Assembly: GCA_038087875.1 (NCBI GenBank)
Contig: JAXLNO010002817.1
Location: 508-64,000, forward strand
Direction of reading: 5' to 3'
Source: Malacoraja senta
Lineage: Eukaryota
DNA: 63,493 bases
Shown: positions 1 to 62,474 of the stretch, piece by piece
Layout: the number at the start of each line of letters is the position of its first letter
Position numbering within the stretch: the stretch's first letter is position 1
Notes under the pieces: generated by a model
The model's input: only the letters and a program-made list of their open reading frames with translations
Databases searched by the model: none
What the model was told of the DNA's origin: nothing
Position numbers and translations under genes: made by a program

Positions 1-35
1 ATTACAGACAGTGGACTTTGTTTATGGAACTATGT

Positions 36-160
36 AGGAAGGAACTGTAGATGCTGGTTTAAACCGCAGATAGACACAAAATGCTAGAGTAACTCAACGG
101 GTTAGGCAGCATCTCTGGAGAGAAGGAATGTGTCACGTTTCCTGTCGAAACCCTTATCTA
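36..160 (-). mobile_element. Penelope-like pseudo-LTR fragment (degenerate)
   Basis: Contains gtaactcaacgggttaggcagcatctctggagagaagg. The same motif terminates the GIY-YIG-bearing element at 6765-7550 and recurs at about 1313-1380, 1540-1610 and 14402-14598. Confidence 0.6.
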
Positions 161-324
161 ATGGAACTGGTGTGCTACATTGCTGAGAACTATATGCCAC
201 ACTCTGTACCTTCCCCTTTGCTCTACCTACAGTTCTTGAGTTTGATGATCATATATATGTATTTTGTTACCTCATCCAATTGGATAGCATGCAAAACATA
301 GCTTTACACACTACCTCAGTACAT

Positions 325-618
325 GGGCAGCACAGTGGCGCAGAGGGAAAGTTGCTGCCTTACAGTACCACAGACCAAAGTTCAATCCTGACAATGGGTG
401 CTGTCTATCTAGAGTTCATATATTCTCCCTGTGACCATGTGAGTTATCTCCGGGTGATACAGTTCCGTCACATTCAAAGACGTGCAGGTTTGTAAGTTTT
501 TTGGCTTCTGTAAATTGTCCCTCGTGTGTAGGATAGAACTAATATTTGGGTGGTCGTTAGTCAGCACAGGTTCAGTGGGCCAAAAGGCCTATTTTCATGC
601 TGTACCTCGAAACTAAAC
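325..618 (+). mobile_element. tRNA-derived HE1-like (V-)SINE, diverged
   Basis: A-box-like ggcagcacagtggcgcag, B-box-like gttcaatcc, central aaagacgtgcaggtttgtaag core and ctaaac tail. Homologous to 2871-3163. Confidence 0.8.
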
Positions 619-656
619 GTGACAATAATAAACCGAAACTTATCCCTGTGCCTATC

Positions 657-708
657 TGTAGATTAGTGTCACTCATACTGTGGCTCCGCCCACAGGCTTA
701 TTAGACAG

Positions 709-739
<31 letters not shown>

Positions 740-852
740 AGACTGGTAGTAAGCATGCTGAGAAGAAAGCACCTTGTGTTTCCTCTGCAGAGTTACTAAT
801 AAAAGACTATGGATTCTAACCACTATGTGTGAGTTTGATCATTCTTCCAACA
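657..852 (+). mobile_element. Solo LTR (196 bp) with 5-bp target-site duplication
   Basis: Begins TGTA (657) and ends AACA (852), flanked on both sides by CTATC (652-656, 853-857). Has an internal GC box (ccgccc), a (CT)n tract and AATAAA about 50 nt before the 3' end. Confidence 0.8.
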
Positions 853-1312
853 CTATCTCTTGTGTTGTTACGTCTCTGGAACTAAGTGGTAGCTGCTCTT
901 AACTGTTGTAGCATAACTGTTTATGCTGAACAATTCATGAAAAAGTCTAAAAAGGATAAAAAAAACAAGTGATTCCAGCATGTTGAAAGATAATTGTGAC
1001 ATACGTAATGGGTGGCACTGCGACACAGTTCCAGTGACGAGGGTTTGATCACAATCTTGAAACAGAAAAACTTAAACTGAGGCAGGCGCCTCTACTTCAT
1101 CAATCCAGTGCTGTTATGACACTGGGCCTTAACATGAGAAATGTGAAATTGGGTATTTCCTTAGGGCAAAATCAGACTTCTCAGAGACTTGAAAGCTGCA
1201 AGATAGTCCTGAAATGTGGTGGATCTCTGCGTGCTGTTCCAGAAGAGGACGAATTGTACTTATGTACAGTATGACTTGACTGGGGAGAATGCAGAACAAC
1301 CATTTCACTGCA

Positions 1313-1402
1313 GATAGACACAAAAAGCTGGAGTAACTCAGCGGGACAGGCAGCATCTCTGGAGAGAAGGGACGGGGTGTCCAGCATCTGCTGTTCCATC
1401 CA
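1313..1402. mobile_element. Short Penelope pseudo-LTR-containing insert between 15-bp direct repeats
   Basis: AACCATTTCACTGCA occurs at 1298-1312 and 1403-1417, flanking gatagacac...gtaactcagcgggacaggcagcatctctggagagaagg. Confidence 0.55.
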
Positions 1403-1664
1403 AACCATTTCACTGCATCTCTGCAAGCATGAAACTAAACAGTGTTATATAAAATGCAGCACATACTGCAGTACTCAAGTAGGTCAGGCTGTCCTAATTT
1501 TGCAGGTGGATAACTTTACTGTAATTTAAAAAAAACACAAAAACGTGCAGGTGTAACTCAGTGGCTCAGGCAGCATCTGGAAGACATGGTTATGTAATGT
1601 TTCAGCTTGGTGTCCTTCTTCATACTTCTTGCATCTGTTCTTTCTGACTTCAACTTAACAGTTG

Positions 1665-2170
1665 AAAAGGACCATCGTGAGCCCCACCACGGGGCGTGGA
1701 CTTACCATCGGAGCGGATCCCTTGCCTGGGATCGCTCCCACCGCGGCCTGCGGACTTACCATCAAGGGCTCCCAGACTCGGGAGAGGCTAGTCGGGAGCT
1801 CCAACGCCACAGAAGGTTCGTCCAGCCCCGACGCGAGGGTCGATCGCCCGGCGCGGGGGAGCTGACAATCCCCCGATGCGGGAGCTGATCACCTCGACGC
1901 GGAGGGCCCGAACGCCGCCGGCTACGGGACTCAAGACCGTCCGTTCAACGGGGGCTCGAGGCCCCCGACCAAGGAAGAACAACAAGGGAAGGACTTGGAA
2001 CTTTATTTTCGCCTTTCATCACAGTGAGGAATGTGTAGGAGTCACTATGATGGATGTTTATGTCAAAATGTGTTTTTGAGTCTGTTGCTTTTTAAAATTG
2101 TATGACTGACCTGGCCAGTGAATTTTACTACACCAATTGGTGTATGTGACAATAAATGAACATGAACTTA
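1665..2170 (+). mobile_element. GC-rich non-coding retroposon family, copy 1 (unclassified)
   Basis: GC-rich body with repeated ggacttaccatc. The 3' end ...gcctttcatcacagtgaggaat...tgtgacaataaa plus a short tandem tail is shared with 7860-8350, 10915-11412 and (reverse) 11615-12790. Confidence 0.6.
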
Positions 2171-2194
2171 TGAAATGACCAGTTCTTTTATCGA

Positions 2195-2785
2195 CAGGGA
2201 ATACAACTCGTTGAATGTGGAATGGAGTGTGAAAGGCTGCAACATGTCAAGGCAGAAGCTGAGTTGTTGGTCCTCAAGGTTACTTTCACCCTTGTTATCC
2301 TAGTGTACAGCAGATGGATGGATCATGGTGGGTGTTGAATGGAGAATTAAAGTGGCAGGAATTAGGAATCTTAGAAAGTCCCATGGATTGAATGCAGGTT
2401 CTCCAGAAAGCAGCCATTCTATTTGTTTCATTGATGCAATGTGGAAGATTACGTCATGAAAACTAAATGCAGTAGATTTGACTGGAAGTCCAAGTGTTTC
2501 ACGCTGTTTCACTTTGAAGAACTGCCTGGGTCTATGGACAGTGGGAAGGGAAGAGGTAAATGGATAGATGTTGCATGCACCAAGACAGGAAAGTAGAGGA
2601 AAGTTGTGGGGATAGTAGACAGACCAGGGAGTGAAAAAGGGAATGACTACTTCAAAATATAGAATAGGGAGCAGGGCAGGAGGGGAGGGAGAAATGGATT
2701 GACAAATTGAATCAGATTTAAACTGGGAGTAAGTATTCAACATGGAGGCTGGAGGAGTGGAAAACATATCTCTGCCCTGTCCAAT
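2195..2785 (-). mobile_element. Old, degenerate Penelope-like remnant
   Basis: 2461-2580 aligns by eye to 7250-7375 (aactaaatgcagtagatttgactggaagtccaagtg vs aactgaaacagcggatacagtacatgaggttggaagaggtgcaagtg). Confidence 0.45.
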
Positions 2786-2787
2786 GA

Positions 2788-3400
2788 GAATATATAGAAC
2801 ATAGAACAGTACAAGAACAGGACTTTCAGCCTGCAATGTCCATGTGGAACAGGATACCAAGTTAAACTAAGGCAACACAGAGGCACAGTGATAGAGTGGC
2901 TGTCTTACAGCATTAGAGACCCGGGTTCGATCCTGACTAGAGTGCTGTCTGGACGGAGTTTGTACGTTCTCTCTGTCACCCCGTGGGTTTTCTCTGGGGG
3001 CTCCGGTTTCCTCCCAAATACAAAAGACGTGCAGGTTTGTAGGTTAATTGGCTTCTGTAAATTGTCCCTAGCTTGTAGGACAAAAATAGTGAATGGGCAA
3101 TTGCTGGTCAGTGCAGACTCAGTGGCCCAAAGATCCTGTTTCCATACTCTATCTCTAAACTAAACCAAAACTAATCTCCACTGCCTGCATGTGATCCATA
3201 TCCTTGTATTCCCTGCACATTCACAAGCCTGTCCAAAACCTTCTTAAGCACCATTATCATGTCCTCCTCTACCACCACTCCTGGTAGCGCATTCTAGGTA
3301 TCAAGCTCTCTCTGCAAAAAAACACTTGACCTGCACATCTCGTGTAAATGTTGCCCTTCGAAGCTTAACGCTGTGCTCTTTTGAGATGTGTGATAGACAT
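2788..3400 (-). mobile_element. CR1 LINE 3' fragment interrupted by a SINE
   Basis: catagaacatagaac tail at the left end. The CR1-type 3' UTR continues after the SINE, and aactaa occurs on both sides of the SINE. Confidence 0.6.
2871..3163 (+). mobile_element. tRNA-derived HE1-like (V-)SINE
   Basis: A box ggcacagtgatagag, B box gggttcgatcc, core ctccggtttcctccca...aaagacgtgcaggtttgtaggttaattggc and (ctaaa)n tail. Confidence 0.88.
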
Positions 3401-3479
3401 GCAATCCCATTAGGGGCTGTCAACTGTGGTCAATAAAATCCATGGTTAACTAATATGAAAGACATCAATTACACTTTCT

Positions 3480-5433
3480 CCCTGTCAAACAGGGATGTAT
3501 TGCTGAGGTTCTATAAGGCGCCGGTCAAGCCACATTTGGAGCATTGTGAGCAATTTTGGGCACCATATCTGAGGAAGGATGTGCTGGCTCTGGAGAGGGT
3601 CCAGAGGAGGTGTACAAGAATGATCCCAGGAATGAGTGGGTTAACATATGATGACCATTTGATGGCAGTGGGCCTGTACTTGCTGGAGTTTAGAAGAATA
3701 AGGGGGGACCTCATTGAATCATACAAAATAGTGAAAAACTCTTTGCCTTTTGAAATTGGTTCAATTATGTTTGCTCCCACAAAATTGCATTAAAAAAACT
3801 ATAGTGAAAATCCTGTAATATATAGTGGTAAACGAATTTGAAAACAATTAAAAAAGACTTTAAAATTGGATAATTTATCACTCTGTCTTCCCATTATAAA
3901 CAACCCTTTATTCAAACCTTCCATGTTGGATAAAGGCTTTACACAATGGAAAAATTATGGAATTAAAAAGATGGGACATCTTTATAGGAAAGGCACTTTT
4001 CTTTCAGTTCAGGAGTTACAACAGATTTACGGACTACACTCAAATAACTTTTTCAGATATTTACAACTTAAAGATTACATTAAATCAAATACACAAGATT
4101 ACAGAACTAGGGAACCGGATGAATTCCTTGATGAATGTTTGAATAAACATCCTAATACAGAAAAATTAATATCTCATATTTATAATACCCTCTTAGATAG
4201 TGAGGTCTCGCCGACGGATTTATATAGACACACATGGGAAAATGAATTAGGCCAACCCATAACGAAAGATATTTGGGACGAAAGTCTACAATATATACAT
4301 CAATGCTCGTTAAATGCCAGACATGCTTTAATACAATTTAAAGTATTACATAGATTACATTATTCTTAAACAATATTAAATAGAATCTTCCCATATATCT
4401 CTCCTATTTGTGATAAATGCCAGCATTTAGAGGCTAACTTAACTCATACCTTTGTAAATTGTATAAAAATCAAAAAATTCTGTCCGGAGATTTTCAGAAT
4501 AATTTCTGAATTAGTCAATTGGATCCCGACTCAAAACTAATAATATTAGGAATATCAGAACAAAGCCTAAGACTTACAATAAACCAAAGAAACTTTCTTG
4601 ATTATAGTATAATAATTGGGAAAAAATTAATATAAACATTTTGGAAAGGTCCTATAACCCCCACAATTAAAATGTGGATTATGGAAATGTCAGAGACCTT
4701 ACATTTGGAAAGAACTAGACTTGTCTTAATTGACAAACATGAATTATTTAATAGAATATGGTCTCCATTTATTGATTTTTTGAAAGGGTAAATTGGTTCA
4801 GCATGGGAATCTGACTGAAATCCAAGCTCAGGATTAGATGAATAGTTTATGCTTTATAACTTACGGACCTATCTCCAAAGTTGTATTATTGGTTAATTAT
4901 TCCATTCTTCTTTATCATGCCTTTTTTTTTAAATTTCTCACTTTCTATCTATAAAACAAAACTAAATAGAAGCAGATTTAATATACAATTGATAAATGAG
5001 GACCACTATTATTTTGATAGCTGGACTCCCACCTATTAGCAAAGTAGGATTGATATATAAGCAATGTTTGTATTATGATATGCACATGCTTCTAATAACA
5101 ATATTTTAAAAACAAAAAAATAGTGAAAGGCTTGGATAGATGTGGATGTGGAGAGGATGTCTCCAATGGTGGGAGAGTCTACGACGAGAGGTCATAGTCT
5201 CAATATTAAAGGACATTCCTTTAGGAAAGAGATGAGGATGAATTTATTTTGTCAGAGGGTGGTGATTCAATGGATATTTTTAATTCTTGATTAGTATGCA
5301 CGTCAGGGGTTATGGGGAGAAGGCAGGAGAATGGGGTTAGGAGGGAGAGATAGATCAGCCATGATTGACTGGCGAAGTCGACTTGATGGGCCGAATGTTC
5401 TAATGCTGCAGCCATCACTTATGACCTTATGAC
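3480..5433 (+). mobile_element. CR1 LINE 3' fragment (RT C-terminus) split by an L1 insertion
   Basis: Peptide RDVLLRFYKAPVKPHLEHCEQFWAPYLRKDVLALERVQRR...RGDLIESYKIVK. It resumes at 5117 (ggcttggatag...) and ends in a (ttatgac)n tail. Confidence 0.88.
3737..5116 (+). mobile_element. 5'-truncated L1-clade LINE (ORF2 C-terminus, 3' UTR, A-tail) with 12-bp TSD
   Basis: ORF 3866-4369 (NNPLFKPS...QLKDYI...QFKVLHRLHY) is followed by a Cys-rich region. AAAATAGTGAAA occurs at 3725-3736 and 5117-5128. Same family as 31471-35265. Confidence 0.88.
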
Positions 5434-5745
5434 TCAGTTGGCTTCCTCCATGTGCTCCAGTTTTGTCCCATATACCAAAGACGTGCCAGTGAGTTAGTTG
5501 GACATTGCAAATTATCCGTCGTGGAGCTGAATGCAAGGAGAATCCGAGGGACCTGCGTGCAAGTTGTGAGAGAGAGCTGTGGAACAGTTTGTCGACATTG
5601 CATAGAAAACTAGCATAGAATCAATGGGCCGAATGACCTTTCCCTCTGTCATGATTGGGTCAGAGATAATATTACTCATTGCCTCAGAGTGAAATATTAC
5701 TCATTGCCTATCATCACAAAACAACATCCTTTCTTCTGAACTCAC

Positions 5746-6021
5746 CTTTTCTGGTCAGGTATGTCTTTCCAATTGCATAGTATGTAAGCCATAGATCCAC
5801 ACAGTCATGTTCTAACAAGCTCTTGAAATAACGGTTCATTTTTTCATTCTTGTCCCATTTCTCTTTGAAGGGCTCAGCTATTGGACCATGCACCGTCCAC
5901 TTTAGTTTGTCCTTATCAAAACTAAATGCATATCTTCCATCAAAAGCCAACTTCAATATCCCTACAGTGGGACTGTGATCGTCCACCTCACAACCAAACT
6001 GTCCTTGAACGTAGTGATAAT
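5746..6021 (-). CDS. MHC class I-like heavy chain, alpha-2 domain exon (nonclassical type)
   Basis: Acceptor tttttatttttatttcag, exon of exactly 276 nt, donor G|GTGAGT, phase 1 at both ends. Translation (D)YHYVQGQFGCEVDDHSPTVGILKLAFDGRYAFSFDKDKLKWTVHGPIAEPFKEKWDKNEKMNRYFKSLLEHDCVDLWLTYYAIGKTYLTRK. It has H93, Q96, G100-C101, A117-F-D119-G120, W133, K146-W147, C164, Y171 and G175-K176 (HLA numbering by eye). Open frame with no stops. Confidence 0.93.
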
Positions 6022-6174
6022 CTGAAATAAAAATAAAAATCATTATTTGATTAATTGTTATGACTGGGTAATTTCTGAACACCAGGGTCCAAGTCATTTA
6101 TATATGTCACAAGTAGCAAGGGTCACAGCACAGATCCCTGCAGAACTCTACTTGTCACTGAACTACAGCCTGAA

Positions 6175-6635
6175 TATTTGGCCTTCCGTACAACTGTAGA
6201 GACCATATTATTGTACGGGTGTGAGGCATGGACTCTCACTCCAGCACTGTCCAAGTCTCTCGATGGTACCTACACCCGAATGCTCGGAAAAGTTCAAAAT
6301 GTCAGATGGAGGGACCACATCACCAACGCCCAGCTCTATGGGTAGAATCCACCTCTGACCGAGAAGATCACGTTGAGAAGGATGAGGCTCGCAGGTCACT
6401 GGCTCCGCCACCCAGAAATGCCAGCAAACAAGGTTGTGCTGTGGGAACCCACCCATGGAAGACTTGACCCAGGATGGCCAATCAAGACGATGGTGAAGAC
6501 GTTGATGGAAGACGCATGTGTAGAGATAAACGAGGCGCCTGCCAGCTGCATGGAGGAGAGATGTGTGGTGCGTCCGTCACCGTGCCCGTCGGAAACCAGC
6601 ACGGCACTAATGTTTTCAACGATTATTATTATCAT
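6175..6635 (+). mobile_element. RTE-clade LINE 3' fragment
   Basis: ETILLYGCEAWTLT...LDGTYTRML...W.DHITN..LYG...RRMRLAGHWLRHPE.PA.KVVLWEP is typical of RTE ORF C-termini. Ends in a (TTA)n tail at about 6622-6635. Confidence 0.8.
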
Positions 6636-6764
6636 CCACTACACCCCTCTGTCCTGGGGATTTATCCACATTTCTCTTCAAGTGATCCAACATCTCCTTC
6701 TTGCTTAACTTCAAAGTGTCCCTGCATGTTAGCATTCTCCACATTGATTCTCCATGTGTAAGAA

Positions 6765-7550
6765 AGAAATGCAGATGCTGCAAATGTTAAAATCGAAGAG
6801 AGACACAAAATGCTGGCGTAACTCAGCGGGTCAGGCAGCTTCCCTGGAGAGATGGAATGGGCATTGTTTTGGGTCGAGACCCTTCTTTAGACTGATGTCA
6901 GGGGAGGGACAAAGATAGAATGTCGGCGGAGACAGTAAGACTGGTGGCAGAATTGAGAAGGGGGAGGGGATGGAGAGAGAAATCAAGGGCTATCGAAAGT
7001 AATAGAAGTCAATGTTCATATCGCTGGAGTATAGACTACCCAAGCGAAATATGAGGTGCTGTTCCTCCAATTTGGGCTGGCCTCACTCGGACAATGGAGG
7101 AGGCCCAGGACAGAAAGGTCAGATTGGGAATGGGAGGGGGAGTTGAAGTGCTGAGCCACCGGGAGATCGGGTAGGGTAAGACGGACTGAGGGGAAGTGTT
7201 CAGCAAAACGATCGCCGAGACCGCGCTTGGTCTCACTGATGTAGAGAACTGAAACAGCGGATACAGTACATGAGGTTGGAAGAGGTGCAAGTGAACTTCT
7301 GCCTCACCTGGAATGACTTTAGGTCCTTGGACAGAGTCGAGGGGGGACGTACAGGGACAGGTGTTGCATCTCCTGCTGTTGCAGGGGAAAGTATCCGGGG
7401 AGCGGGTGGTTTGGGTGTGAAGGGACGAGTTGACCAGGGAGTTTCGGAGGGAACGGTCTCTGCGGAAAGCAGAAAGGGGTGGAGATGGGAAGATGTGACC
7501 AGTAGTGGGATCCCGTTGGAGGTGGCAAAAATGTTGGAGGATTTTATGAT
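6765..7550 (-). mobile_element. Penelope-like element 3' part (GIY-YIG endonuclease remnant plus pseudo-LTR)
   Basis: The minus strand reads FQVRQKFTCTSSNLMYCIRC...(LYI)...DLPVAQHFNSPSHSQSDLSVLGLLHC..A..KLEEQHLIFRLGSL. The pseudo-LTR motif lies at 6790-6900. Confidence 0.85.
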
Positions 7551-7859
7551 GTACTTACTATTAATGGTCCTTACTATTCTACATGTCTTCCTTGGTGAAA
7601 CCAAACCTCGCCTATATCCACAAACTCCAAGCACATATTCCCTTCTATATCCTTAAGCAATCCACCTTTTGCTGTAATGGTTGCCTCGCCAACAGTATGT
7701 CTGTCCCTTCCTTCTTTGTGTCTTTGTACGTGTTAAATGTATATTCTTTAGTGTTCTTTAGCTTGTTTTGGGGTGGGGGGGGGTGGGGGAGTTGTGGGAA
7801 ACTTTTCCTAATCTCTTACCTCGACGTTGATGCGATATTTTCTGTATCGTATCTCCGTC

Positions 7860-8350
7860 CACAATGCGGCCTAACATTGAGGAATGGCGGCCTTTGCTAG
7901 AGATCGACCGGGAGATCCATCGCAGGAGCTTGTGGACTTACCACCATGGAGATCGCAATCCCTGTCGGGGATCGACTTTAGGGCTCCAACTGTGAGAGGC
8001 TGCAAGACATTAACATCGCGGAGCCCGCGGTCCTCGGTCGAGACCGACATCCGGGACCTCCAAGCCGCAGGAGTTTCGACTGCTCCGATGTGGGAGTTTC
8101 GATTCCAGGTTTCGACCACCGACTGCAGATTGTTTGACTGCCCCGACCGCGGGAGATAAAGAGGAAGGAGATTAGACTTTATTGCCTTCTCTCACAGTGA
8201 GGAACGTGCGGGCTCCTCTGTTGTGGATGTTTATGTTAACTTTTACGTTATTGGGTATCTTGTTGCTTTTTTTTGTATGGTGTATGGTAGTCTGCATTTC
8301 AATGTACCTTAATTGGTATATGTGACAATAAACTAACCATGAAACCTTGA
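7860..8350 (+). mobile_element. GC-rich non-coding retroposon family, copy 2
   Basis: tgtggacttaccacc body and the 3' end ttgccttctctcacagtgaggaac...atgtgacaataaactaaccatgaaacc. Confidence 0.6.
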
Positions 8351-8557
8351 AAAAGATGTGGGATTTTCTGTAATCCGACTCACTAAAGCCACTTTGTGGC
8401 CTTTATTTGCCCCTTTACTTTTAAGCATTAGAGCAGTTGTTCTTAACCTTTTTGGCCCCACGACCCCATCAGGCATTCTTGATCAGTACCGTGACTTCTG
8501 AAACAAAATTTGAAAAAAAACAGCCCGATTTATTAAAACATGTCTGCCATTGCTCAG

Positions 8558-10317
8558 TCAATGGGATGGCTGAAATTGCTTCGCAGTCATCAGGCAATCA
8601 AAACATGGACGAATGCTCGACAGGCAGCATCTCATGTCAGTGTCGATCACAAGCCTATTGCGTACCTTCGTTTTCAGAGTTACCATAGTTGAGAATCCAC
8701 CCTCACAGTGAGAGGTTGAGGGGGACTGGAACAATAGGGTCAGGGCCCTATTTGAAAGAGCAGGACAGTCCTTCACTTTCAGCCAAAACGTGGCGAGCTC
8801 TTGTTCCATGAAGTCACTCTTGAGCTGCGCATCTTCAAGAATTCGGTAAAATTCAACCTTCGCAGTCACGTCAGTATCACTGATGCCACCATCTTCAACG
8901 GAAAAGGGTCGGATGATCCACTGATCACGAGAGCGGTCGTCCAGTCCGAGGAAGTAACGTTCGATGGCTTCACTAATTGCCAGAAGGTGGGTTGAGATCT
9001 CCTCGTGGAAGTGGCATTCAGCATCAGGCGTAGCATCCAGGAGAGTCGTCATCTCAGGGAAGATAGCCGTGTCACCATCCTGGACTCTTCTCTGGTAAAG
9101 GTTCCTCCTGAATGCTGCCACTTTGCCACAAGCTGTGTGTAGCATTGGGATGTTTCCTTGAAATTAGAGGTTCAAGGAATTCACCTCAGCGAAGAAGTCA
9201 GCCAAGTAAGCAACCTTCATCACGAACAGTTCATCCTGCATCTTTTCATGAAGCTGATTCTCCTTCTCAGTACACCTTCTCTCCAAGAACAGCGCTATTT
9301 CCACTCGAAGTTGAATCACATGATTGAGAACTTTACCACGCAAAAGCCAGCGCACTTCTGTGTGGAATAACAGAATAGTGAAATCGGCGCCCATTTCTTC
9401 ACACATCGCTTGAAGATTCTTGAGTTTGTTGCGCTCTCGGATGTGGTTCACAATCTTCACCACACCTGAAAGCACTTCTCGAAGACCAAGAGGGAGAGTC
9501 TTCATCGCTAAAGCATGGCGATGTATCATGCAGTGGGTGAAGGAGACATGGGGAGCGACATCCTTCACGAAGGCTTGGAAACCGGTTCTGCAACCGACCA
9601 TGGAAGGTGCCCCAACTGTACACGTCCCAACAAGGCATTCCCAGCCAAGCTCATGTTTGATGAGGAAGGCTTCCAGCATTCTGAACACATCTTCTTCCTG
9701 AGTGGTAGTAGCCAATGGCTCCGAGAACAGGTACTCCTCCATTGAGGTAACGAACGTAGACTAGCAGTTGGGAACATGAGGCAACATCTGTTGACTCGCC
9801 CAGTTGCAGTGAATACACTGGACTGCTCGTCACAGCCCTCACTACTTCCAGCAGAATATCATTACCCATATCCGAGATTCTACTTTTGACTGTGTCATTC
9901 AAAAGGGAAATCTGTCTGAACTTGTTTGACTGCTGTTCCCCCAGCACCGCTGCTTCGAGAAGGCATGGCTTGATAAGCGCTTCACCGATGCTGTGAGGTT
10001 TCTTAGTCTGTGTGATTCGATAAGCAATCCGGTATGAAGCCTGCAACGCTGCTTCATTTTGATGAGCGAGTGACCCGTTGAATAGATGCGGGATCCCTTG
10101 AGTACGGCTTCTTTTCGTTTGAAATAGTCCACGCTCTTCCCCGCCAGGTTGCTGTGACAAGACACCAAATGGATCTTCAGTTTGCTGGGCTTCATGCTCT
10201 CGTGACTCTAAACCTTAACACAGAGAACACATTGCAGCATGACCACGGATTTTGAACAATGCTTGTGAAGCCGAACTTGGGAAATGCTTCACTATACGTG
10301 CGCGTCTTGGAAGACAT
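8558..10317 (-). pseudogene. Buster/ZBED5-family hAT transposase, frameshifted
   Basis: Starts MSSKTRTYSEAFPKFGFT. Has a BED finger (CVLC...SHESMKPSKLKIHLVSCH), YSLQLGES(T)DVAS, CTVGAPSMVG, THCMIHRHALA, LLFHTEVRWLLRG, AYLADFF and a C-terminal CEGGFSTM...K.RNRL dimerisation motif, split over four ORFs. Confidence 0.93.
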
Positions 10318-10914
10318 GGTTCACAACACACACTGTTTGTGCGTGTATATGCAGGGCCTCAGAGGAATTTTATCAGTGGGTACAAAGCATCTTTTGGGCC
10401 CCCTTCCCTTCTCCATTAGTCATCCTGTTTTTATCCACTATGCTACAGTTTTATGCCATGAGCTGTAGCGTGCACGGCAAAAAGGGGTATGGAAGATGAG
10501 AGAGGGGTGGAATGGGGCGCTCTGTTGATTTTCTGCATTTGAGGCCTTATGTCCCTATACACCCTCCATGATAAATATAAATAAATATAAATAAAATAAA
10601 AGGATCAGAAAGCACATTTGTTTTCCTTCACTCTATAAATGCTGCCTCACCCGTTGAGTTTCTCCAGCATTTTATCTACCTTTGTTTTGAACATCTTTGT
10701 TTATGCTACAATACAGATAAGGAGAAAGAATTCACATTGAAACATCCTTTTATGTTTCAATGCAGATCATATCATCAAAGGACATAATTATTAGTAAAAA
10801 GTAAAAGATTTATTATATAAATTTACTTTATATAAAGAGGTTTCCTGGCCTTTTTTGTGAAAAATGTCAAATCACAGCATGAAAATGTATTGTTCTGGCA
10901 ATGTTTGATTCAAT

Positions 10915-11412
10915 ACTATTGATTCAATACGTTGACACCGTGGAGCTGTGGTCTGCGGAGCTTCTAGCCGCTGGCGTGGCGTGGACTTGCCATCCAGAGT
11001 CTGGAATCCCTCGCCGGGGGTCACCAGAGACGAGCTCGAACCGCTGGCCTGCGGCTTATAACATCCTAAAGCTGCGGTCTCCACTAGGAAAGTGCCGAGT
11101 CGGGACCTCCAAGCCGCAGAGTGTGTTTGTCCGTCCCAACGTCGGAGTTTGGATCATCCCGACGAGAGTGCCTTGTACATCGGGCCGTCCCTAGCGGCGA
11201 CTATGGAGGGGTTATGGCCCCGAACACGGGTGAACAAAGGAGGACGACTGGCTGAAACTTGTTGCCTTCCACCACAGTGAAGAATGCTGTAGTGGATGTT
11301 TGTGTTCAATTTTATTGTGTATTGTGTGTTCTTTTTACGTGTATCACTGCTGGCAAATTCATTTCACTGCACCTTTGGGTATATGTGATGAATAAAACTG
11401 ACTTTGACTTTG
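10915..11412 (+). mobile_element. GC-rich non-coding retroposon family, copy 3
   Basis: gtggacttgccatcc body and the 3' end ttgccttccaccacagtgaagaatgc...atgtgatgaataaaactgactttgactttga. Confidence 0.6.
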
Positions 11413-11614
11413 AATACTTAGCCTGGCCAAATCCACAAGACGTTCATGAGACATTGTCGACCTTAAATAATTCTTAATCAGCTTGAGTTTGCTAAATGAC
11501 CTCTGCAGAAGCTACTGTTGCTGGAATTGTTAATAGTATTCTGAAGCTAACACAAACATTTGGAAACAGGTTACCAAGGCAATAGTCTGTTAACAAGTTC
11601 AACAGATCTAATGG

Positions 11615-12353
11615 TTCAACAATCAACAATCAGTTTTATTCGTCACGTTGCACATAAAGTGCAAGTGAAATGAATTTGCCAGCAGCGGTACAATCATAAA
11701 GAACACACAAAAACACACTAAACATTTAACACAAACATCCACCACAGCATTCATAACTCTGGTGGAAGGCACAAAATTTGGCCAGACCTCCTCCATTTTC
11801 CCCCGTGGTCGGGACCTCAACCCTCCGCAGCTGCCGCTGCGGGCATCCAGATGAGTGAAATTCAGGTAAGTCCTGAAACGGTGCCCCCACCGGAGACCTC
11901 GGCTTCAGGTTGGTGTGGGCCGCAGGCCGGCGGTCGGTGATTTAAAGTCCCCGCCGAGCCGCAGCCAGAAGCACCGCAGTCCGCAGGGCCGGCAGTCGAA
12001 GCTCCCCTCCAGGGGTCCCCGGCGAGGGCCCCGCTCCCGATGGTAAGTTGCCGCCGCGCCTGCGGTAGAAGCTTCTCCTTCTCCCGGATCCCGCACGAGG
12101 GATCACAGGCTGCAGACGCCGCACCTGGAGCTCTGCAGACCGCGTCACAGGCCAGCGAAACGTAGCGCTCCCCCTCCAGGCCCGCTCCACGCCGAGAGGC
12201 CACGCTGCGCCCGCCGCTGAAGTCCCGGGCGCGTTTTGACACAGCGCCAGCCCCAGCCCCACACACCCACACCCCCCCACCCCCACACACACACCCACAC
12301 ACACACACACCCATACACCCACACCCACACCCACCCCCCCCACCCCCCTACTC

Positions 12354-12384
<31 letters not shown>

Positions 12385-12790
12385 CTCACATATACCCACA
12401 CACACACACACACACTCACTCACTCACACACACCCTCACCCTCACCCACACCTCACCCACTCACTCACTCACACCCACCCACCCACACTGACCCACACCC
12501 ACTGACCTACACCCCCACCCACACAAATCCACCCACTTACCCACGCCCACAAACACACCCACCCCCACCCCCACCCAAACGCAGGCCCGGACGACTGAAA
12601 CAGCCGTGGCTGCCAACTCTCACCACCTCCCCGGGCGGGGCCACCACAGCCACTGTCGCTGGAAAGCCCATATCTCCACTCCAGCTCCCCACGGGCCTCC
12701 ACCAGCGACTCCGCCGACACTTGCCTCTCCACCGGCCACCAGCGGGCCAGAGCCGTCACCTTCCCAGTTCAGCACCAGGCCCTCAACCTC
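11615..12790 (-). mobile_element. GC-rich non-coding retroposon (related family, reverse) with internal CA-rich tract
   Basis: The minus strand ends ...acgtgacgaataaaactgattgttgattgtt. The body carries cttaccatcgggag, and 11711-11790 is the reverse complement of the family 3' region seen at 11260-11340. Confidence 0.55.
12250..12575. repeat. (CA)n / (CCCA)n / (CTCA)n compound low-complexity tract
   Basis: Seen directly. It explains the HTHTHT and VCVCV ORFs. Confidence 0.9.
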
Positions 12791-12826
12791 CACCATGCAG
12801 ACAGCACGTGGTCTAATTCTGCTGGC

Positions 12827-13040
12827 TCCTAGTGCCCCCCCTCCTACAGGGAAGATCCATCAGTAGTGATGACTCTGGTGGGTCCTAGTGCTCCCCCCCT
12901 ATAGGGCAGATCCATCAGTCAGTTGGGTCCTAGTGCTCTCCCTCCTCCTGCAGGGAAGATCCATCAGTAGTGATGACTGTTGGGTCCTAGTGCTCTCCAG
13001 CCTCCCCTCTCCTACAGGGAAGACCCATCAGTAGTGATAG
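12827..13040. repeat. Minisatellite, about 50-58-bp unit, about 4 copies
   Basis: Repeated cctagtgctc(c)n...cagggaagatccatcagtagtgatgact...gggt. Confidence 0.85.
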
Positions 13041-13480
13041 GTCTTCCCCTTCCCCCTCTTTTAATCAGGTTACCCCGACCACACACCCACCAGTTAAAAT
13101 TCCCTGCTTTATTATGGATCACAATTTCTACGAATTACGATATATAAAACTCTCAAGGCACAAAATGTAAATGCTAGTCTTCACAAAATATATGCAAACA
13201 TTTTCTGAAATTTCAGGAAATTCCCACCCCCCCTCCTTCAGCTCCCGGGCTCGTATTGGACTCTGGGCCCGCATACGATGTACCCCCTGCACCCCCCTCT
13301 CATAGGCCCTGTGTATACGTAAGCGCATTCGTGAACAAAATACTGTGTGTGGTATGTACCTTTGTTAGGTTCCTAAAAATAGGCTCAACAAATTGATGTT
13401 CTTTACAACCCCTTCATGACCCCCGGAAAAACCCCAAACGACCCCCATGGGGGTCACGACCCCCAGGTTAAGAACCACTG

Positions 13481-13682
13481 CTTTGGAGATACAGTGCTGA
13501 AACAGGCCCTTCAGCCCAGACTAGGGACAATTTACATTTACACCAAGCCAATTTACCTACATCTCAGAGTAAAGTCACACAGGTTACGGGGAGAAGATGC
13601 AAACTCCGTACAGTCACCACTCGTAGTCAGGTTCAAACCAGGGTCTCTGGTGCTGCAAGGCAGCAACTCGTGTAAGGCCACG
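13481..13682 (-). mobile_element. HE1-like SINE (internally deleted), reverse
   Basis: The reverse complement gives cttgcagcaccagagaccctggtttgaacctgac...ggagtttgcatcttctccccgtaacc...gggcctgtttcagcactgtatctccaaag. Confidence 0.75.
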
Positions 13683-14401
13683 ATCTCTTGGCTTTGCTTA
13701 TAATTATTATCATGTTTTATCTTCTATTGTGTTCTTTTTGCTTATTGCATATAAACAAATATAAAGCTGCACATAAGGTTGGATCTTTTCGAGGCCCGAG
13801 CTGCCCCATCTTTTACCACAAAACTGCTTCCTATATTTAGAGAAACATAGATATAATAAGGCTCACCCCTCATGGGCATTGAAGGCTTTCTCTAAAATAT
13901 GGAGACCATTAAGCTGTTCACAGCCAAGTTTATTTTTCACTATTGGCCATGACCCCTAGTGTACTCGGCGTTGGCATTGAACAGGTTAAATATATCCAGT
14001 GATGTGTAGCTGCGCTACCCTTCATTGGTATTTTTAAGGGCCTGTCCCACTTACGTGTCCTTGGCACACAAATTATGCGACCTTGTGGTCGCATTGAGGC
14101 GCACGGGCATCCTATGGCCGCGCGGTGCCGGTCCCACTTGGAAGCGCGGAGGTGTATGTAGTTGTGCGCGACATCGCTCGGGGCTCCGAAAATTTTGTAG
14201 TGAATGAAATCTTCGCGCGCCCACGGCCTGTGGCGGAACTGACGGCCAAAGTGGGACAGGCCCAAGACCCCGGCGCGACGCAAAGTCTCACTTTCAACAG
14301 CAGCAGAAGCAGGCAAACGATCGCCGAACTCGGCCTGGGGCTCACGGCCGTTGCGTTCCAGATCCGCCCCCACTTCTACTCCCAGAGCGGGGCCAAGAAA
14401 A

Positions 14402-14598
14402 TTGAAGATAGACACGAAATGCAGGAGTAACACAGCGGGACCGGCAGCATCTCTGGAGAGAAGCAATGGGTGATGTTTCGGGTCAAGACCCTTCTTTTCA
14501 GACTGAAGAAGAGTCTCGACACGAAACGTCACCCATTGCTTCTCTCCAGAGATGCTGCCGGTCCCGCTGAGTTACTCCAGCCTTGTGTCTATCTTCAA
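14402..14598. mobile_element. Inverted (tail-to-tail) pair of Penelope pseudo-LTRs forming an about 197-bp palindrome
   Basis: ttgaagatagacac...tctctggagagaagcaatgggtga...tcacccattgcttctctccagaga...gtgtctatcttcaa, centred near 14500. Confidence 0.85.
14503..14530 (+). ncRNA. Minimal hammerhead ribozyme core (Penelope-associated), probably inactive
   Basis: CUGAAGA-A-[GAGUC-UC-GACAC]-GAAA-CGUC matches the minimal PLE-type hammerhead core. Helix II has one mismatch and no helix I partner is evident. Confidence 0.6.
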
Positions 14599-15199
14599 AT
14601 GACGTCACGCACTCCAGACGGCTGTGCGTACGCATGTAATAGCGCCCGACCTTCGCCGGACCATCGTGGCTCAACGCGTAATATGCGTGCCAAGGACACG
14701 TAAGTGGGACAGGCCCCTTTACTTAGATGATTCATTCCCTCTGGCATTGATTGATGAATCAAAGTGGGGGGGGGGGGTGATGGAATTTGTAAGGATTTTC
14801 TGGTCAGTTTGATTAAAACTGCTCACTCCTTGAAAAGGAGAGTCTGTGAACTTTAGCCCAGAGACAAAGAACAGTTTGTGAACTCAAGGTTATAATTGAT
14901 AAAAACCTAGGCACAACTGTGAACAACAACCCTTTATTAGGATGAAGGTAATGAGCTAATGCCAACCATGCCCCTGGGACCAGGAGTAATAAGGAAGGGT
15001 CAAAACTTGGATGATGTTTTCATTCCAATAAGAAACTCTACAAACAATGATAGCTGAATAAAACATAATTATGTTGTATAGATGAAGAGCCTCCTTTTCA
15101 AGCTGCTTTCTGCAGTCTTTTAGTTGTTCTGCAGATCCTGTACATTCTCTCGTCTTCGTGTTTTCAAGAAACACCACAAATAGTCGAATGTATACTAAT

Positions 15200-17130
15200 T
15201 ATAGAAACATAGAAAAATAGGCACAGGAGTATGCCATTCGGCCATTCGAGCCAGCACCGCCATTCAATATGATCATGCCTGCATCTAGAATCAGTACCCC
15301 ATTCCTGCTTTTAGAAACATAGACACACAGAAAATAGGTGCAGGAGCAGGCCATTCGGCCCTTCGAGCCTGCAACGCCATTCAATATGATCATGGCTGAT
15401 CATTCAACTCAGTATCCTGTACCTGCCTTCTCTCCATACCCCCTGATCCCTTTAGCCACAAGGGCCACATCTAACTCCCTCTTAAATATAGCCAATGAAC
15501 GGGCATCAACTACATTCTGTGGCAGAGAATTCCTGAGATTCACCACTCTCTGTGTAAAAAATGTTTTTCTCATCTCATTCCTAAAAGATTTCCCCTTTAT
15601 CCTTAAACTGTGACCCCTTGTTCTGGACTTCCCCAACATCGGGAACAATCTTCCTGCATCTAGCCTGTCCAACCCCTTAAGAATTTTGTAAGTTTCTATA
15701 AGATCCCCCCTCAATCTTCTAAATTCTAGCGAGTACAAGCCGAGTCTATCCAGTCTTTCTTCATATGAAAGTCCTGACATCCCAGGAATCAGTCTGGTGA
15801 ACCTTCTCTGTACTCCCTCTATGGCAAGAATGTCCTTCCTCAGATTAGGAGAACAAAACTGTAGGCAATACTCCAGGTGTGGTCTCACCAAGACCCTGAA
15901 CAACTGCAGTAGAACCTCCCTGCTCCTATACTCAAATCCTTTTGCTATGAATGCTAACATACCATTCGCTTTCTTCACTGCCTGCTGCACCTGCATACCT
16001 ACTTTCAATGACTGGTGAACCATGACACACCAGGTCTCGTTGCATCTCCCCTTTTCCTAATCGGCCACCATTCAGATAATAGTCTACTTTCCTGTTTTTG
16101 CCACCAAAGTGGACAACCTCACATTTATCCACATTATACTGCATCTGCCATGCATTTGCCCACTCACCCAGCGTATCCAAGTCACCTTGCAGCCTCCTAG
16201 CACCCTCCTCACAGCTAACACTGCCCCCCAGCTTCGTGTCATCCGCAAACTTGGAGATGTTGCATTCAATTCCCTCGTCCAAATCATTAATATATATTGT
16301 AAATAGCTGGGGTCCCAGCACTGAGCCTTGCGGTACCCCACTAGTCACTGCCTGCCATTCTGAAAAGGACCCGTTTACTCCTACTCTTTGCTTCCTGTCT
16401 GCCAGTCAGTTCTCTATCCACATCAATACTGAACCCCCATAACCGTGTGCTTTAAGTTTGTATTTTAATCTCTTATGTGGGACCTTGTCGAAAGACTTCT
16501 GAAAGTCCAGATATAACACATCCACTGATTCTCCCTTATCCACTCTGCTAGTTACATCCTCGAAAAATTCTATAAGATTCGTCAGACATGATTTACCTTT
16601 CATAAATCCATGCTGACTTTGTCCAATGAATTCACCATTTTCCTAATGTGCTGCTATCCCATCTTTAATAACTGACTCTAGCAGTTTCCCCACTACTGAT
16701 GTTGGACTAACTGGTCTGTAATACCCCGTTTTCTCTCTCCCTCCCTTTTTAAAAAGTGGGGTTACATTAGCTACCCTCCAATCCTCAGGAACTACTCCAG
16801 AATCTAAAGAGCTTTGAAAAATGATCACTAATGCATCCACTATTTCTGGGGCTACTTCCTTAAGTACTCTGGGATGCAGCCTATCTGGCCCTGGGGATTT
16901 ATCGGCCTTTAATCCATTCAATTTACCTAACACCACTTCCCGACTAACCTGGATTTCACTCAGTTCCTCCATCTCATTTTACCCCCGGTCCCCTGCTATT
17001 TCCAGCAGTTAATTAAGTCTTCCTTAGTGAAGACAGAACCATAGTAGTTATTCAATTGGTCTGCCATGTCCTTGTTCCCCATGATCAATTCACCTGTTTC
17101 TGACTGCAAGGGACCTACATTTGTTTTAAC
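15200..17130 (-). mobile_element. CR1 LINE, 5'-truncated (RT domain, several disruptions), with a second short CR1 3' end at 15200-15310
   Basis: ORFs contain KADKSPGPD, YRPVSPTS, SCLTNLIEFF, LDFQKSFDKV, SGVPQGSVLGP and FADD. (catagaaa)n tail at about 15312-15335. Confidence 0.95.
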
Positions 17131-17269
17131 TAATCTTTTCCCCCATATCCCTTGATTCCTTTAGCCTTAGAGCTAAATCTAACTCTCTCTTGAAAGTACG
17201 TTGTTTAGATAAGAGCCTTCTTTTCAAGCTTCTTTCTGCGGTCTTTTAGTTGTGTTTTGCAGGTGCTTT

Positions 17270-62200: not shown

Positions 62201-62474
62201 AAGGTGGTTTGCTTTGAAAATGCAAAAGGTGGTTTGGTTTGAAAATTCAAAAGGTGGTCTAGTTTGAAAATGCAAAAGGAGGTTTGGTATGAAAATGCAA
62301 AAGGTGGTTTCGTTTGAAAATGCAAATGGTGGTTTGGTTTTAAAACGCAAATGGTGCTTTGGTTTGAAAATACAAAAGGTTTGCTTTGAAATTGCAAAAG
62401 GTGGTTTGGTTTGAAAATGCAAATGGTGGTTTAGTTTGAAAATGGAAAAGGATTGCTTTGATAATGCAAAAGGT
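35266..62474. repeat. Satellite array, right block (about 27 kb; same monomer family)
   Basis: GAAAATGCAAAAGGTGGTTTGCTTT is especially frequent, mixed with the left-block units. Diagnostic variants recur at kb-scale offsets. Confidence 0.97.

What the first reader, a model, noticed from the sequence alone, without database searches (positions are those of the whole stretch)
5746..6021. Intact alpha-2 exon of a divergent nonclassical MHC class I-like gene with a hydrophobic groove
Seen: an open 276-nt phase-1/1 exon with clean splice sites, in a region where nearly everything else is decayed TE. Known: classical class I alpha-2 domains keep Y123/F123, T143, K146, W147, Y159 and Y171 for peptide termini, and Q96 and D122 contact beta-2-microglobulin. 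By eye, this exon keeps Q96, C101/C164, K146, W147 and Y171 but has T143F, Y159L, Y123A, D122Y and W167L, with W shifted to 168. Floor positions 99, 114 and 116 are F, L and L. The loop after C101 is one residue short and the 147-164 helix one residue long, as in non-mammalian class I. Inference: a nonclassical lineage, possibly binding lipid or another non-peptide ligand (CD1/ZAG/EPCR-like). It may be a known elasmobranch lineage (UBA/UCA/UDA/UEA or CD1-like) or an undescribed one.
Basis: partly seen in the sequence, partly recalled or inferred. Interest (0 to 1): 0.85.

Follow-up and report, generated by a model that had tools for sequence, protein, structure and literature searches.

The report
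Skate UGA class I alpha-2 exon
This is a real, intact alpha-2 exon, but it belongs to UGA, an already described CD1-like (lipid-binding) non-classical MHC class I gene of sharks and rays, so it is a new copy of a known gene rather than a new lineage.

Summary
The exon is real. It lies on the minus strand at 5746-6021: 276 nt, phase 1/1, with an AG acceptor, a GTGAGT donor and an open frame.

It is not a new lineage. The peptide is 94.5% identical to the annotated Amblyraja radiata protein XP_032898133.1 and 92% to Leucoraja erinacea copies. It is about 66% identical (E 1e-34) to PDB 9CH4, titled "shark nonclassical MHC class I, UGA". A maximum-likelihood tree puts it inside the batoid branch of that lineage. 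Reviews already describe UGA as CD1-like and lipid-binding. This scan had already found UGA copies on other pieces of this genome (s1-140081, s1-140082).

The window holds only this exon. Alignment with three skate loci runs from window base 1, about 1-1.5 kb short of where alpha-3 should lie, to about 17 kb in intron 2. Collinear alignment then stops. Most of the rest is about 38 kb of a 25-bp satellite, in two arrays, that the relatives lack. No alpha-1 exon lies in the 57 kb upstream.

Near-identical public DNA contigs carry the lineage-typical N104 and D137 where the window has D and G. Some also carry a 2-nt frameshift inside the exon. Whether this copy works is therefore open. Interest is low.

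The parts
5746..6021 (-). Alpha-2 exon of a skate UGA (CD1-like non-classical MHC class I) gene copy. It is 276 nt, phase 1/1, and encodes the peptide YHYVQGQFGC...TYLTRK.
   Evidence: Open frame. Pfam MHC_I 2.2e-12. PDB 9ch4_A 1e-34, with the UGA title. 94.5% aa and 96.7% nt identity to the A. radiata orthologue. Placed in the UGA clade. All lineage-invariant residues are kept.
6022..6035 (-). 3' splice site of intron 2: a polypyrimidine tract followed by AG (tatttttatttcag).
   Evidence: same form as in L001-L003. An RNA-type contig of a related species (X20) starts matching exactly at 6021 and has 65 further letters on its 5' side.
5740..5745 (-). 5' splice site of intron 3 (gtgagt).
   Evidence: A contig of a related species (X21) leaves the window exactly at 5746 and continues into sequence that translates VSPEVTLAAR, the start of alpha-3.
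1..5739 (-). Part of intron 3, collinear with the skate UGA loci. The window's first base corresponds to a point about 1.0-1.5 kb upstream of the alpha-3 exon in the relatives. A 1.4-kb repeat at about 3737-5118 is an insertion relative to them.
   Evidence: blastn blocks 1-1070, 1122-1667, 2171-3680 and 5118-5667 against L001, L002 and L003. Alpha-3 lies at L001 74155, L002 64491 and L003 59402. Substitution identity is 92-94%.
6036..17139 (-). The 3' part of intron 2, collinear with the relatives in blocks up to about 16.6-17.1 kb. It is interrupted by insertions, including the long ORFs at 8561-10214 and a LINE fragment at 15312-17139.
   Evidence: Blocks 6314-7565, 13576-13994, 15315-15581 and 16411-16649 match L002 and L003 in the expected order and strand.
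17678..28744 (.). First array of a 25-bp satellite, about 464 copies. It lies where the relatives have the rest of intron 2 and the alpha-1 exon.
   Evidence: Tandem Repeats Finder. The satellite is absent from L001-L003. tblastn finds no alpha-1, leader or alpha-3 anywhere in the window.
35261..62475 (.). Second array of the same 25-bp satellite, about 1129 copies.
   Evidence: Both arrays end in the same flank, ACTTCCGGTGGC.C.ATGGAG.

Best explanation
The stretch is the alpha-2 exon of a skate copy of UGA. UGA is a non-classical MHC class I gene conserved across sharks, rays and skates and described as CD1-like.

In the mature protein this exon would supply half of the ligand-binding platform: four floor strands and the long alpha-2 helix, pinned by the C101-C164 disulphide. 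Its groove-facing positions are mostly large hydrophobic residues (F99, L114, L116, F124, F143, M152, Y155, F156, L159, L160, L167). Residues that classical class I uses to clamp peptide ends (Y123, T143, Y159) are replaced. This fits a lipid tail rather than a peptide. That step is inferred from the lineage; it is not shown for this copy.

The exon sits in a segment of at least 17 kb that is collinear with the UGA genes of Amblyraja and Leucoraja, from intron 3 to intron 2. So it is a piece of a UGA locus, not a stray domain.

The rest of the gene is not in the window. Alpha-3 is expected just beyond the left end. Alpha-1 is missing from the 57 kb upstream, which is mostly satellite. I put the odds that this copy is part of a working gene at a little under even.
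For: Identity:
- PDB 9ch4_A matches at E 1e-34 over alpha-2 residues 90-179, and its title names UGA.
- The representative search gives only three clusters below 1e-30, all elasmobranch and annotated as class I-like.
- The peptide is 94.5% identical to A. radiata, 92% to L. erinacea and 90% to Rhinoraja.
- The ML tree places the exon in the batoid clade (100/99) of the lineage (97/98).
- All columns invariant in 18 lineage members are kept.

Locus:
- Intron blocks are collinear with three skate loci.
- The exon is 96.7% identical while the introns are 92-94%, so the exon has been under constraint.

Splice use in relatives:
- Contigs X20 and X21 break exactly at 6021 and 5746, and the X21 overhang translates to the alpha-3 start.

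Groove:
- 15 of 18 groove-facing alpha-2 positions are hydrophobic, as in UGA generally (mean 0.82), against 0.69 in 38 other class I sequences.

Function of the lineage:
- PMC12562908 reports crystal structure and mass spectrometry suggesting CD1d-like lipids, cited there as a personal communication.
- The A. radiata orthologue models confidently (pLDDT 92.4) and superposes on 9CH4 with Z 31.2, rmsd 2.3 A over 268 residues.
Against: - No alpha-1, leader, alpha-3, TM or tail exon is in the window.
- Collinearity with the relatives stops at about 17 kb, and about 38 kb of a satellite they lack follows. A connected alpha-1 would need an intron longer than 57 kb, against 11-26 kb in the relatives.
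- Four residues (D104, T109, G137, L169) occur in none of 18 lineage members.
- Near-identical public DNA contigs (99%, introns included) read N104 and D137, so the two exon differences specific to this copy are both non-synonymous.
- Those same contigs include a form with a 2-nt deletion in the exon (GGG to G at 5870-5872), which would stop the frame nine codons later. It is present at about 1:1 with the intact form in one run and is the only form in the other.
- No RNA run of the window's own organism was available.
- Lipid binding is reported for the lineage only through a review's personal communication. The primary paper is not in the library.
Confidence: 0.9

Rival explanations
1. The exon is a dead remnant. 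It would be the 3' portion of a UGA copy (intron 2 to intron 3, perhaps onward) cut off from its promoter, leader and alpha-1 by a rearrangement or by the arrival of satellite DNA. It would still be open only because the break is recent. This accepts the UGA identity and disputes function only.
For: - No alpha-1 lies in 57 kb upstream, and collinearity ends at the satellite edge.
- Both copy-specific exon changes are non-synonymous and give residues unseen in the lineage.
- A frameshifted near-identical form circulates in public reads.
- Earlier scan notes list several class I fragments on other pieces of this genome, one of them at a satellite edge. I did not check those notes.
Against: - The frame is open and both splice sites are canonical and identical in form to the working orthologues.
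- The exon is more conserved than its introns.
- The unseen residues fall at positions that vary within the lineage.
- UGA genes of relatives span 55-99 kb with very long introns, so a long intron is not absurd.
- The window ends before alpha-3 could appear.
Confidence: 0.5
2. The window is an assembly by-product: an alternative-haplotype contig, or an unplaced contig that broke in satellite. It would be the same single UGA locus that the scan saw on another piece. It could even be the 'missing alpha-2' of one of the alpha-1/alpha-3 class I models noted elsewhere in this genome.
For: - The window length is odd (63,493), and no other scan note lies on the same piece.
- It starts about 1 kb short of alpha-3, and most of its far side is satellite.
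- Public contigs show two near-identical forms at about equal depth in one run, as a heterozygote would.
- Scan notes report a frameshifted UGA copy and four class I models 'lacking alpha-2' on other pieces.
Against: - None of those other pieces could be read here.
- Neither form in the public runs is identical to the window: both have T at 5886 and 5983.
- The 'lacking alpha-2' notes are unchecked first readings and may concern other lineages.
Confidence: 0.35
3. The exon belongs to an undescribed class I lineage, distinct from all named elasmobranch lineages.
Against: - 94.5% identity to an annotated skate gene and 66% to the solved shark UGA.
- Placement within the UGA clade is well supported.
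Confidence: 0.02

Closest known systems
Shark UGA, non-classical MHC class I (PDB 9CH4, released 2026-03-18)
   Same: - Same lineage.
- Alpha-2 is about 66% identical, ungapped over residues 90-179, at E 1e-34.
- Same disulphide cysteines.
- Same hydrophobic groove residues: F99, L114, Y122, F124, F126, F143, M152, Y155, F156, L159, L160, L167.
- K146, W147 and Y171 are also shared.
- The skate orthologue model superposes with Z 31.2.
   Different: - It is a shark protein, not a skate one.
- Positions 116, 123 and 168 differ: F, I and L in 9CH4 against L, A and W here.
- 9CH4 is a complete ectodomain, whereas the window holds only the alpha-2 exon.
Annotated skate orthologues: Amblyraja radiata XP_032898133.1; Leucoraja erinacea XP_055521885.1 and XP_055486429.1; Rhinoraja longicauda (P0164)
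   Same: - Alpha-2 identity is 94.5%, 92% and 90% for Amblyraja, Leucoraja and Rhinoraja.
- Exon length, phase and splice sites are identical.
- Introns are collinear.
- The complete orthologue proteins P0154 and P0156 carry the full leader, alpha-1, alpha-2, alpha-3 and TM, plus a DYQNI tail.
   Different: - Five amino-acid differences from Amblyraja: E102, D104, T109, G137 and L169.
- Introns differ by about 7%, against 3% between Amblyraja and Leucoraja. The window is therefore either an orthologue from a more distant skate or an older paralogue.
- No other exons are in the window, and a satellite lies where the relatives have the upstream part of intron 2.
CD1 (mammals, birds, reptiles)
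   Same: It is a working analogy only. Both have a hydrophobic groove that lacks some of the peptide-end clamps. The lineage is reported to bind CD1d-type lipids (PMC12562908). The orthologues carry a YxxI tail motif, like endosome-targeted CD1 isoforms.
   Different: - No sequence-level membership.
- No chain named CD1 is among the 60 best PDB matches shown; after UGA the best are chicken and other non-mammalian class I, MR1 and ZAG.
- The Pfam MHC_I_3 model scores 18.5 bits, below its cut-off of 35, while MHC_I passes.
- Orthology between CD1 and the shark lineages is stated to be unresolved (PMC10751288).
Neighbouring skate class I-like gene XP_055486430.1 (P0015), possibly UFA
   Same: - It is the sister branch of the UGA clade in the alpha-2 tree, with 96/94 support.
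- It lies on the same L. erinacea contig as a UGA copy.
- Its best PDB match is also 9CH4.
   Different: It is only about 43% identical in alpha-2. The name UFA is my guess; no tool result names it.
Classical elasmobranch class I, UAA (PDB 6LUP)
   Same: Same fold, with the same 276-nt alpha-2 exon plan and the same disulphide.
   Different: The match is weak (E 1.8e-08). Residues that classical class I uses to bind peptide ends (Y123, T143, Y159) are replaced here by A, F and L.

Membership tests
UGA lineage (elasmobranch non-classical MHC class I) | Sequence groups with named UGA rather than with other class I lineages. | tested here: met
   The best PDB match is 9CH4 'UGA' at E 1e-34, against 5e-12 for the next. 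The ML tree places the window inside the clade with 97/98 support, and inside its batoid branch with 100/99. Caveat: the only reference named UGA by a tool is 9CH4, and it was not itself a row of the tree. The other members are automatic annotations.
UGA lineage (elasmobranch non-classical MHC class I) | Lineage-invariant alpha-2 residues are present. | tested here: met
   Every column invariant in 18 members is kept: H93, Q96, F99, G100, C101, L114, K115, A117, D119, G120, F126, D127, L131, W133, W147, F156, K157, L159, C164, L179 and R181.
UGA lineage (elasmobranch non-classical MHC class I) | Exon plan: alpha-2 on one 276-nt phase 1/1 exon with canonical splice sites. | tested here: met
   The same junctions are used in spliced contigs of relatives.
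UGA lineage (elasmobranch non-classical MHC class I) | Complete gene: leader, alpha-1, alpha-3, TM and a tyrosine-motif tail on the same locus. | tested here: not met
   tblastn with six full-length members finds only alpha-2 in the 63.5-kb window. Alpha-3 is expected about 1-1.5 kb beyond the left end by collinearity, so the gene beyond the window ends is untested.
UGA lineage (elasmobranch non-classical MHC class I) | Linkage to the MHC, in the class Ib cluster near UDA and UEA. | not testable with these tools
   The window holds no other recognisable gene. PMC10751288 gives the map position, for UFA, UDA and UEA.
UGA lineage (elasmobranch non-classical MHC class I) | This copy is transcribed and spliced. 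| tested here: inconclusive
   No RNA run of the window's organism was offered. Only relatives' contigs show the junctions.
UGA lineage (elasmobranch non-classical MHC class I) | Binds lipid in a hydrophobic groove. | not testable with these tools
   Sequence proxy only: 15 of 18 groove-facing alpha-2 positions are hydrophobic, equal to the lineage mean and above other class I. The biochemistry is known only from PMC12562908, as a personal communication.
CD1 family | Sequence or profile membership in CD1. | tested here: not met
   No chain named CD1 is among the 60 best PDB matches shown. Pfam MHC_I_3 scores 18.5 bits against a cut-off of 35.
Classical peptide-presenting MHC class I | Conserved alpha-2 residues that bind peptide termini: Y123, T143, K146, W147, Y159 and Y171. 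| tested here: not met
   Only K146, W147 and Y171 are kept. Positions 123, 143 and 159 are A, F and L (numbered on landmarks; conserved so across the lineage).

The most novel reading that the evidence does not exclude
In this skate species the otherwise conserved, low-copy CD1-like gene UGA may exist in both broken and unbroken forms. One form has a 2-nt frameshift in alpha-2. The window holds an unbroken alpha-2 on a haplotype or duplicate whose intron 2 has been invaded by tens of kilobases of satellite. If these are alleles of one locus, a lipid-presenting gene kept in both sharks and batoids would be segregating as a null in a natural population. This contig could also be the 'missing alpha-2' of a class I model elsewhere in the assembly.
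Probability: 0.2. Interest if true: 0.4.

Novelty: already known. Interest (0 to 1): 0.18.

Why it matters
It matters little as a discovery. UGA is named in the literature, has a deposited crystal structure and is annotated in several skates.

The practical value is for annotation. The window's exon can be labelled as UGA alpha-2. It also warns that class I models in this fragmented, satellite-rich assembly may be split across pieces.

The one thread worth following is the status of the gene in this species. A frameshifted near-identical form is present in public reads. This copy has private amino-acid changes and no alpha-1 within 57 kb. If UGA is being lost or is polymorphic for a null here, that would bear on how indispensable CD1-like lipid presentation is in cartilaginous fish.

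Tried and rejected
- **Plus-strand reading:** all three frames hold stops, so the exon is on the minus strand.
- **Partner exons in the window:** I looked at stop-to-stop ORFs of 50 aa or more on the minus strand over 1-18 kb. I also ran tblastn with six full-length lineage members at E up to 10 and word size 2 over the whole window. Only alpha-2 was found.
- **Resumed collinearity beyond the satellites:** the stretches at 28.7-35.3 kb and 62.5-63.5 kb match only dispersed repeats. These are a LINE copy and a repeat that also lies in intron 3.
- **Satellite in the relatives' loci:** absent.
- **Literature:** a search for '9CH4' gave only irrelevant hits. Searches for a primary UFA/UGA paper found only two mentions, PMC10751288 and PMC12562908. 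The lineage name therefore rests on the PDB entry title.
- **The look-up of encoding contigs for P0156:** not on record. The locus was reached through the longest isoform instead.
- **Earlier scan notes by sequence:** blank.
- **RNA evidence for this copy:** no RNA run of the same organism was offered, and run X24 from the same study laid nothing.
- **Rfam on the whole window:** no match.
- **Pfam on the long ORFs at 8561-10214, 7039-7554 and 13933-14571:** no match.
- **dN/dS as a test of decay:** 3 synonymous and 6 non-synonymous nucleotide differences from Amblyraja is too few to separate constraint from drift.
- **An early tree script:** it failed on an off-by-one slice and was rerun correctly.

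Full report
**1. The observation**

The stretch 5746-6021 has stops in all three plus-strand frames. On the minus strand, window:5746-6019 translates into 91 residues without a stop: YHYVQGQFGC...TYLTRK.

The minus-strand sequence shows tatttttatttcag directly before base 6021 and gtgagt directly after base 5746. That gives a 276-nt exon with two bases completing a codon at its start and one base opening a codon at its end, the classic class I alpha-2 plan. The stop-to-stop frame around it is 127 codons.

Pfam MHC_I matches at E 2.2e-12 over profile positions 93-178 of 179, the alpha-2 half.

- Q96, C101, C164, K146, W147 and Y171 are present.
- The floor positions are F99, L114 and L116.
- Y122, A123, F143, L159 and L167 are as stated, with W at 168.
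- The C101-D119 stretch is one residue shorter and the W147-C164 stretch one residue longer.

**2. What it is**

Against all solved structures, one chain stands far above the rest. It is 9ch4_A, at E 1e-34, ungapped over its residues 90-179. The next group (chicken and other non-mammalian class I, MR1, ZAG) sits near 1e-11.

A search of 1.84 billion representative proteins gave only three clusters below 1e-30. One is a skate cluster, 92% identical. It includes Leucoraja erinacea and Amblyraja radiata proteins that NCBI annotates as 'class I histocompatibility antigen, F10 alpha chain-like'. The other two are sawshark proteins.

A word-based search with the full-length Amblyraja protein found the same family in 13 further elasmobranch species, both sharks and batoids. 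The window's peptide is 94.5% identical to Amblyraja radiata XP_032898133.1, 92% to the Leucoraja copies, 90% to Rhinoraja, 80% to a sawfish copy and 62-71% to sharks.

I modelled the Amblyraja ectodomain (pLDDT 92.4) and compared it with the PDB. 9CH4 is the top match, with Z 31.2 and rmsd 2.3 A over 268 residues. The entry title reads 'Crystal structure of shark nonclassical MHC CLASS I, UGA'.

An ML tree of alpha-2 domains (57 rows, 91 columns) places the window inside the batoid branch (100/99) of this lineage (97/98). There it is sister to Amblyraja plus Leucoraja. All columns invariant among 18 lineage members are kept in the window. The exon is therefore UGA alpha-2.

**3. What is known about UGA**

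PMC10751288 (2023) mentions a CD1-like elasmobranch lineage, UFA, as unpublished data. It maps in the class Ib cluster with UDA and UEA.

[quoted passage not shown] It adds that crystal structure and mass spectrometry suggest they bind lipids like those of human CD1d, citing a personal communication. I found no primary paper in the library.

The scan itself had already identified UGA copies on other pieces of this genome (s1-140081 and s1-140082). The possibility of an undescribed lineage is excluded.

**4. The groove, as far as sequence can tell**

I scored 18 alpha-2 positions that face the groove in classical class I. The choice of positions rests on established knowledge of HLA-A2 pockets, and the mapping is mine. 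The window has 15 hydrophobic residues there (0.83). That equals the UGA mean (0.82) and exceeds the mean of 38 other class I sequences in the set (0.69).

The five differences from Amblyraja lie at positions 102, 104, 109, 137 and 169. By the usual class I layout these fall in an outer loop, at the start of the helix and on the upward face of the helix, not among the groove positions scored. Position 169 differs in every skate sequence compared.

**5. The locus**

The relatives' genes are very long. The Amblyraja gene spans 78 kb, and the two Leucoraja gene models span 55 and 99 kb; the 99-kb model is the read-through fusion noted in passing.

| Locus | Intron 2 | Intron 3 |
|---|---|---|
| Amblyraja (L001) | 11 kb | 20 kb |
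| Leucoraja (L002) | 26 kb | 10 kb |
| Leucoraja (L003) | 18 kb | 9 kb |

The window aligns with all three loci in the expected order and strand, from base 1 to about 16.6-17.1 kb. Base 1 corresponds to a point 1.0-1.5 kb upstream of their alpha-3 exon, so alpha-3 probably lies just off the left end.

In the other direction the alignment stops. Then come an 11-kb array of a 25-bp satellite (17678-28744), 6.5 kb of repeats, and a 27-kb array of the same satellite (35261-62475). The satellite is absent from the three related loci. No alpha-1, leader or other class I exon is found anywhere in the window.

Substitution identity in aligned intron blocks is 92-94% to both genera. Amblyraja and Leucoraja are 97% alike, and the two Leucoraja loci 99%. 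So the window is either the orthologue from a more distant skate or an older paralogue. The exon, at 96.7%, is better conserved than the introns, which indicates past constraint.

**6. Read evidence**

No RNA run of the window's organism was available. Two RNA-type contigs from related species show the exon's borders in use.
- One 341-nt contig matches exactly 6021 down to 5746 at 95% identity and has 65 further letters on the 5' side.
- The other runs to 5746 and continues with letters that translate VSPEVTLAAR, the start of alpha-3.

Two runs of 'organism A' hold the exon with its intron flanks at about 99% identity, so they are DNA. Their contigs read T where the window has C at 5886 and 5983. 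That gives D137 and N104, the lineage-typical residues, where the window has G and D.

One form of these contigs lacks two of the three G at 5870-5872. On the coding strand this shifts the frame after residue 49 of the peptide and reaches TGA nine codons later. In run X1 the intact and deleted forms have similar depth (1087 and 1321). In X2 only the deleted form was assembled.

An earlier follow-up in this scan reported a UGA copy with a 2-base frameshift on another piece of the same genome. I could not check whether it is the same deletion.

**7. Reading**

Shown:
- The exon is intact.
- It is UGA.
- It sits in a genuine UGA gene segment of at least 17 kb.
- Its splice sites match those used in relatives.

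Inferred:
- If spliced to alpha-1 and alpha-3, it would form half of a hydrophobic, lipid-type groove.

Open:
- Whether this copy is functional.

For function: the open frame, the canonical sites, and an exon more conserved than its introns. Against function: no alpha-1 in 57 kb and a satellite that the relatives lack. Also against: two private non-synonymous changes to residues unseen in the lineage, and a null form of nearly the same sequence in public data.

I put a working gene at a little under even odds. A dead or truncated copy and an assembly haplotig are both live alternatives, and they are not mutually exclusive.

**8. Verdict**

Novelty: already known. Interest is low. The only thread of some interest is the possible null or duplicate status of UGA in this species.

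Noticed in passing
window 17678-28744 and 35261-62475: There are two arrays (about 464 and 1129 copies) of one 25-bp satellite with a strong G-over-C skew, about 38 kb in all. It is absent from about 280 kb of the related skate UGA loci. Both arrays end in the same flank (ACTTCCGGTGGC.C.ATGGAG), as if the satellite belonged to a larger repeated or mobile unit.
   Followed up: partly
window 5870-5872, seen in public runs X1 and X2: Near-identical (99%) DNA contigs of 'organism A' carry a 2-nt deletion (GGG to G) inside the alpha-2 exon. It gives a stop nine codons later. Intact and deleted forms are at about equal depth in X1, and only the deleted form is in X2. Both forms read N104 and D137 where the window has D and G.
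   Followed up: partly
window 15312-17139 and 28853-30679: Two copies of one LINE fragment, 93% alike and in the same orientation, sit near the ends of the first satellite array. One ends about 540 bases before it and the other begins about 110 bases after it. The first has a reverse-transcriptase ORF (Pfam RVT_1, 8e-14) and appears to be orthologous to a copy in the Leucoraja intron 2.
   Followed up: partly
window 8561-10214 (minus strand): Three adjoining long ORFs (201, 198 and 187 aa) have no Pfam match. They lie in a stretch of intron 2 that has no counterpart in the related loci, so they are probably a decayed transposase-type insertion.
   Followed up: partly
window 3735-4994 and 31695-35187: A repeat inserted in intron 3 (it is absent in Leucoraja) recurs between the satellite arrays at 84-87% identity. 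There it is split by a 2.2-kb insert (31939-34168) in a 61%-GC stretch that holds a 156-bp tandem duplication (32254-32570).
   Followed up: no
L003 (Leucoraja erinacea JAMYXN010000161.1), about 10001-108607: NCBI isoforms X1-X4 of LOC129716032 fuse the UGA exons to a downstream GPR139-like 7TM gene (Pfam MHC_I + C1-set + 7tm_1). This looks like a read-through annotation artefact. The 341-aa isoform X6 with the DYQNI tail is the sensible product.
   Followed up: no
Leucoraja erinacea contig JAMYXN010000384.1 (P0015, XP_055486430.1): A second class I-like gene lies on the same contig as a UGA copy. It is the sister branch of UGA in the alpha-2 tree (96/94), about 43% identical, and its best PDB match is also 9CH4. 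It may be UFA, the other CD1-like lineage named in the literature.
   Followed up: partly
L002 versus L003 (Leucoraja erinacea): The two Leucoraja UGA loci are 99% identical in introns but differ at alpha-2 positions 110, 167 and 169 (V/L, L/Y, H/R). Transcript-derived proteins of both types exist (P0160-P0162), so both alleles, or very recent duplicates, are expressed.
   Followed up: partly
L001 80478-80861 (Amblyraja radiata): A second stretch resembling alpha-3 plus TM (44% identical to residues 206-328 of the UGA protein) lies inside the span of the annotated UGA gene, downstream of its own alpha-3 exon.
   Followed up: no
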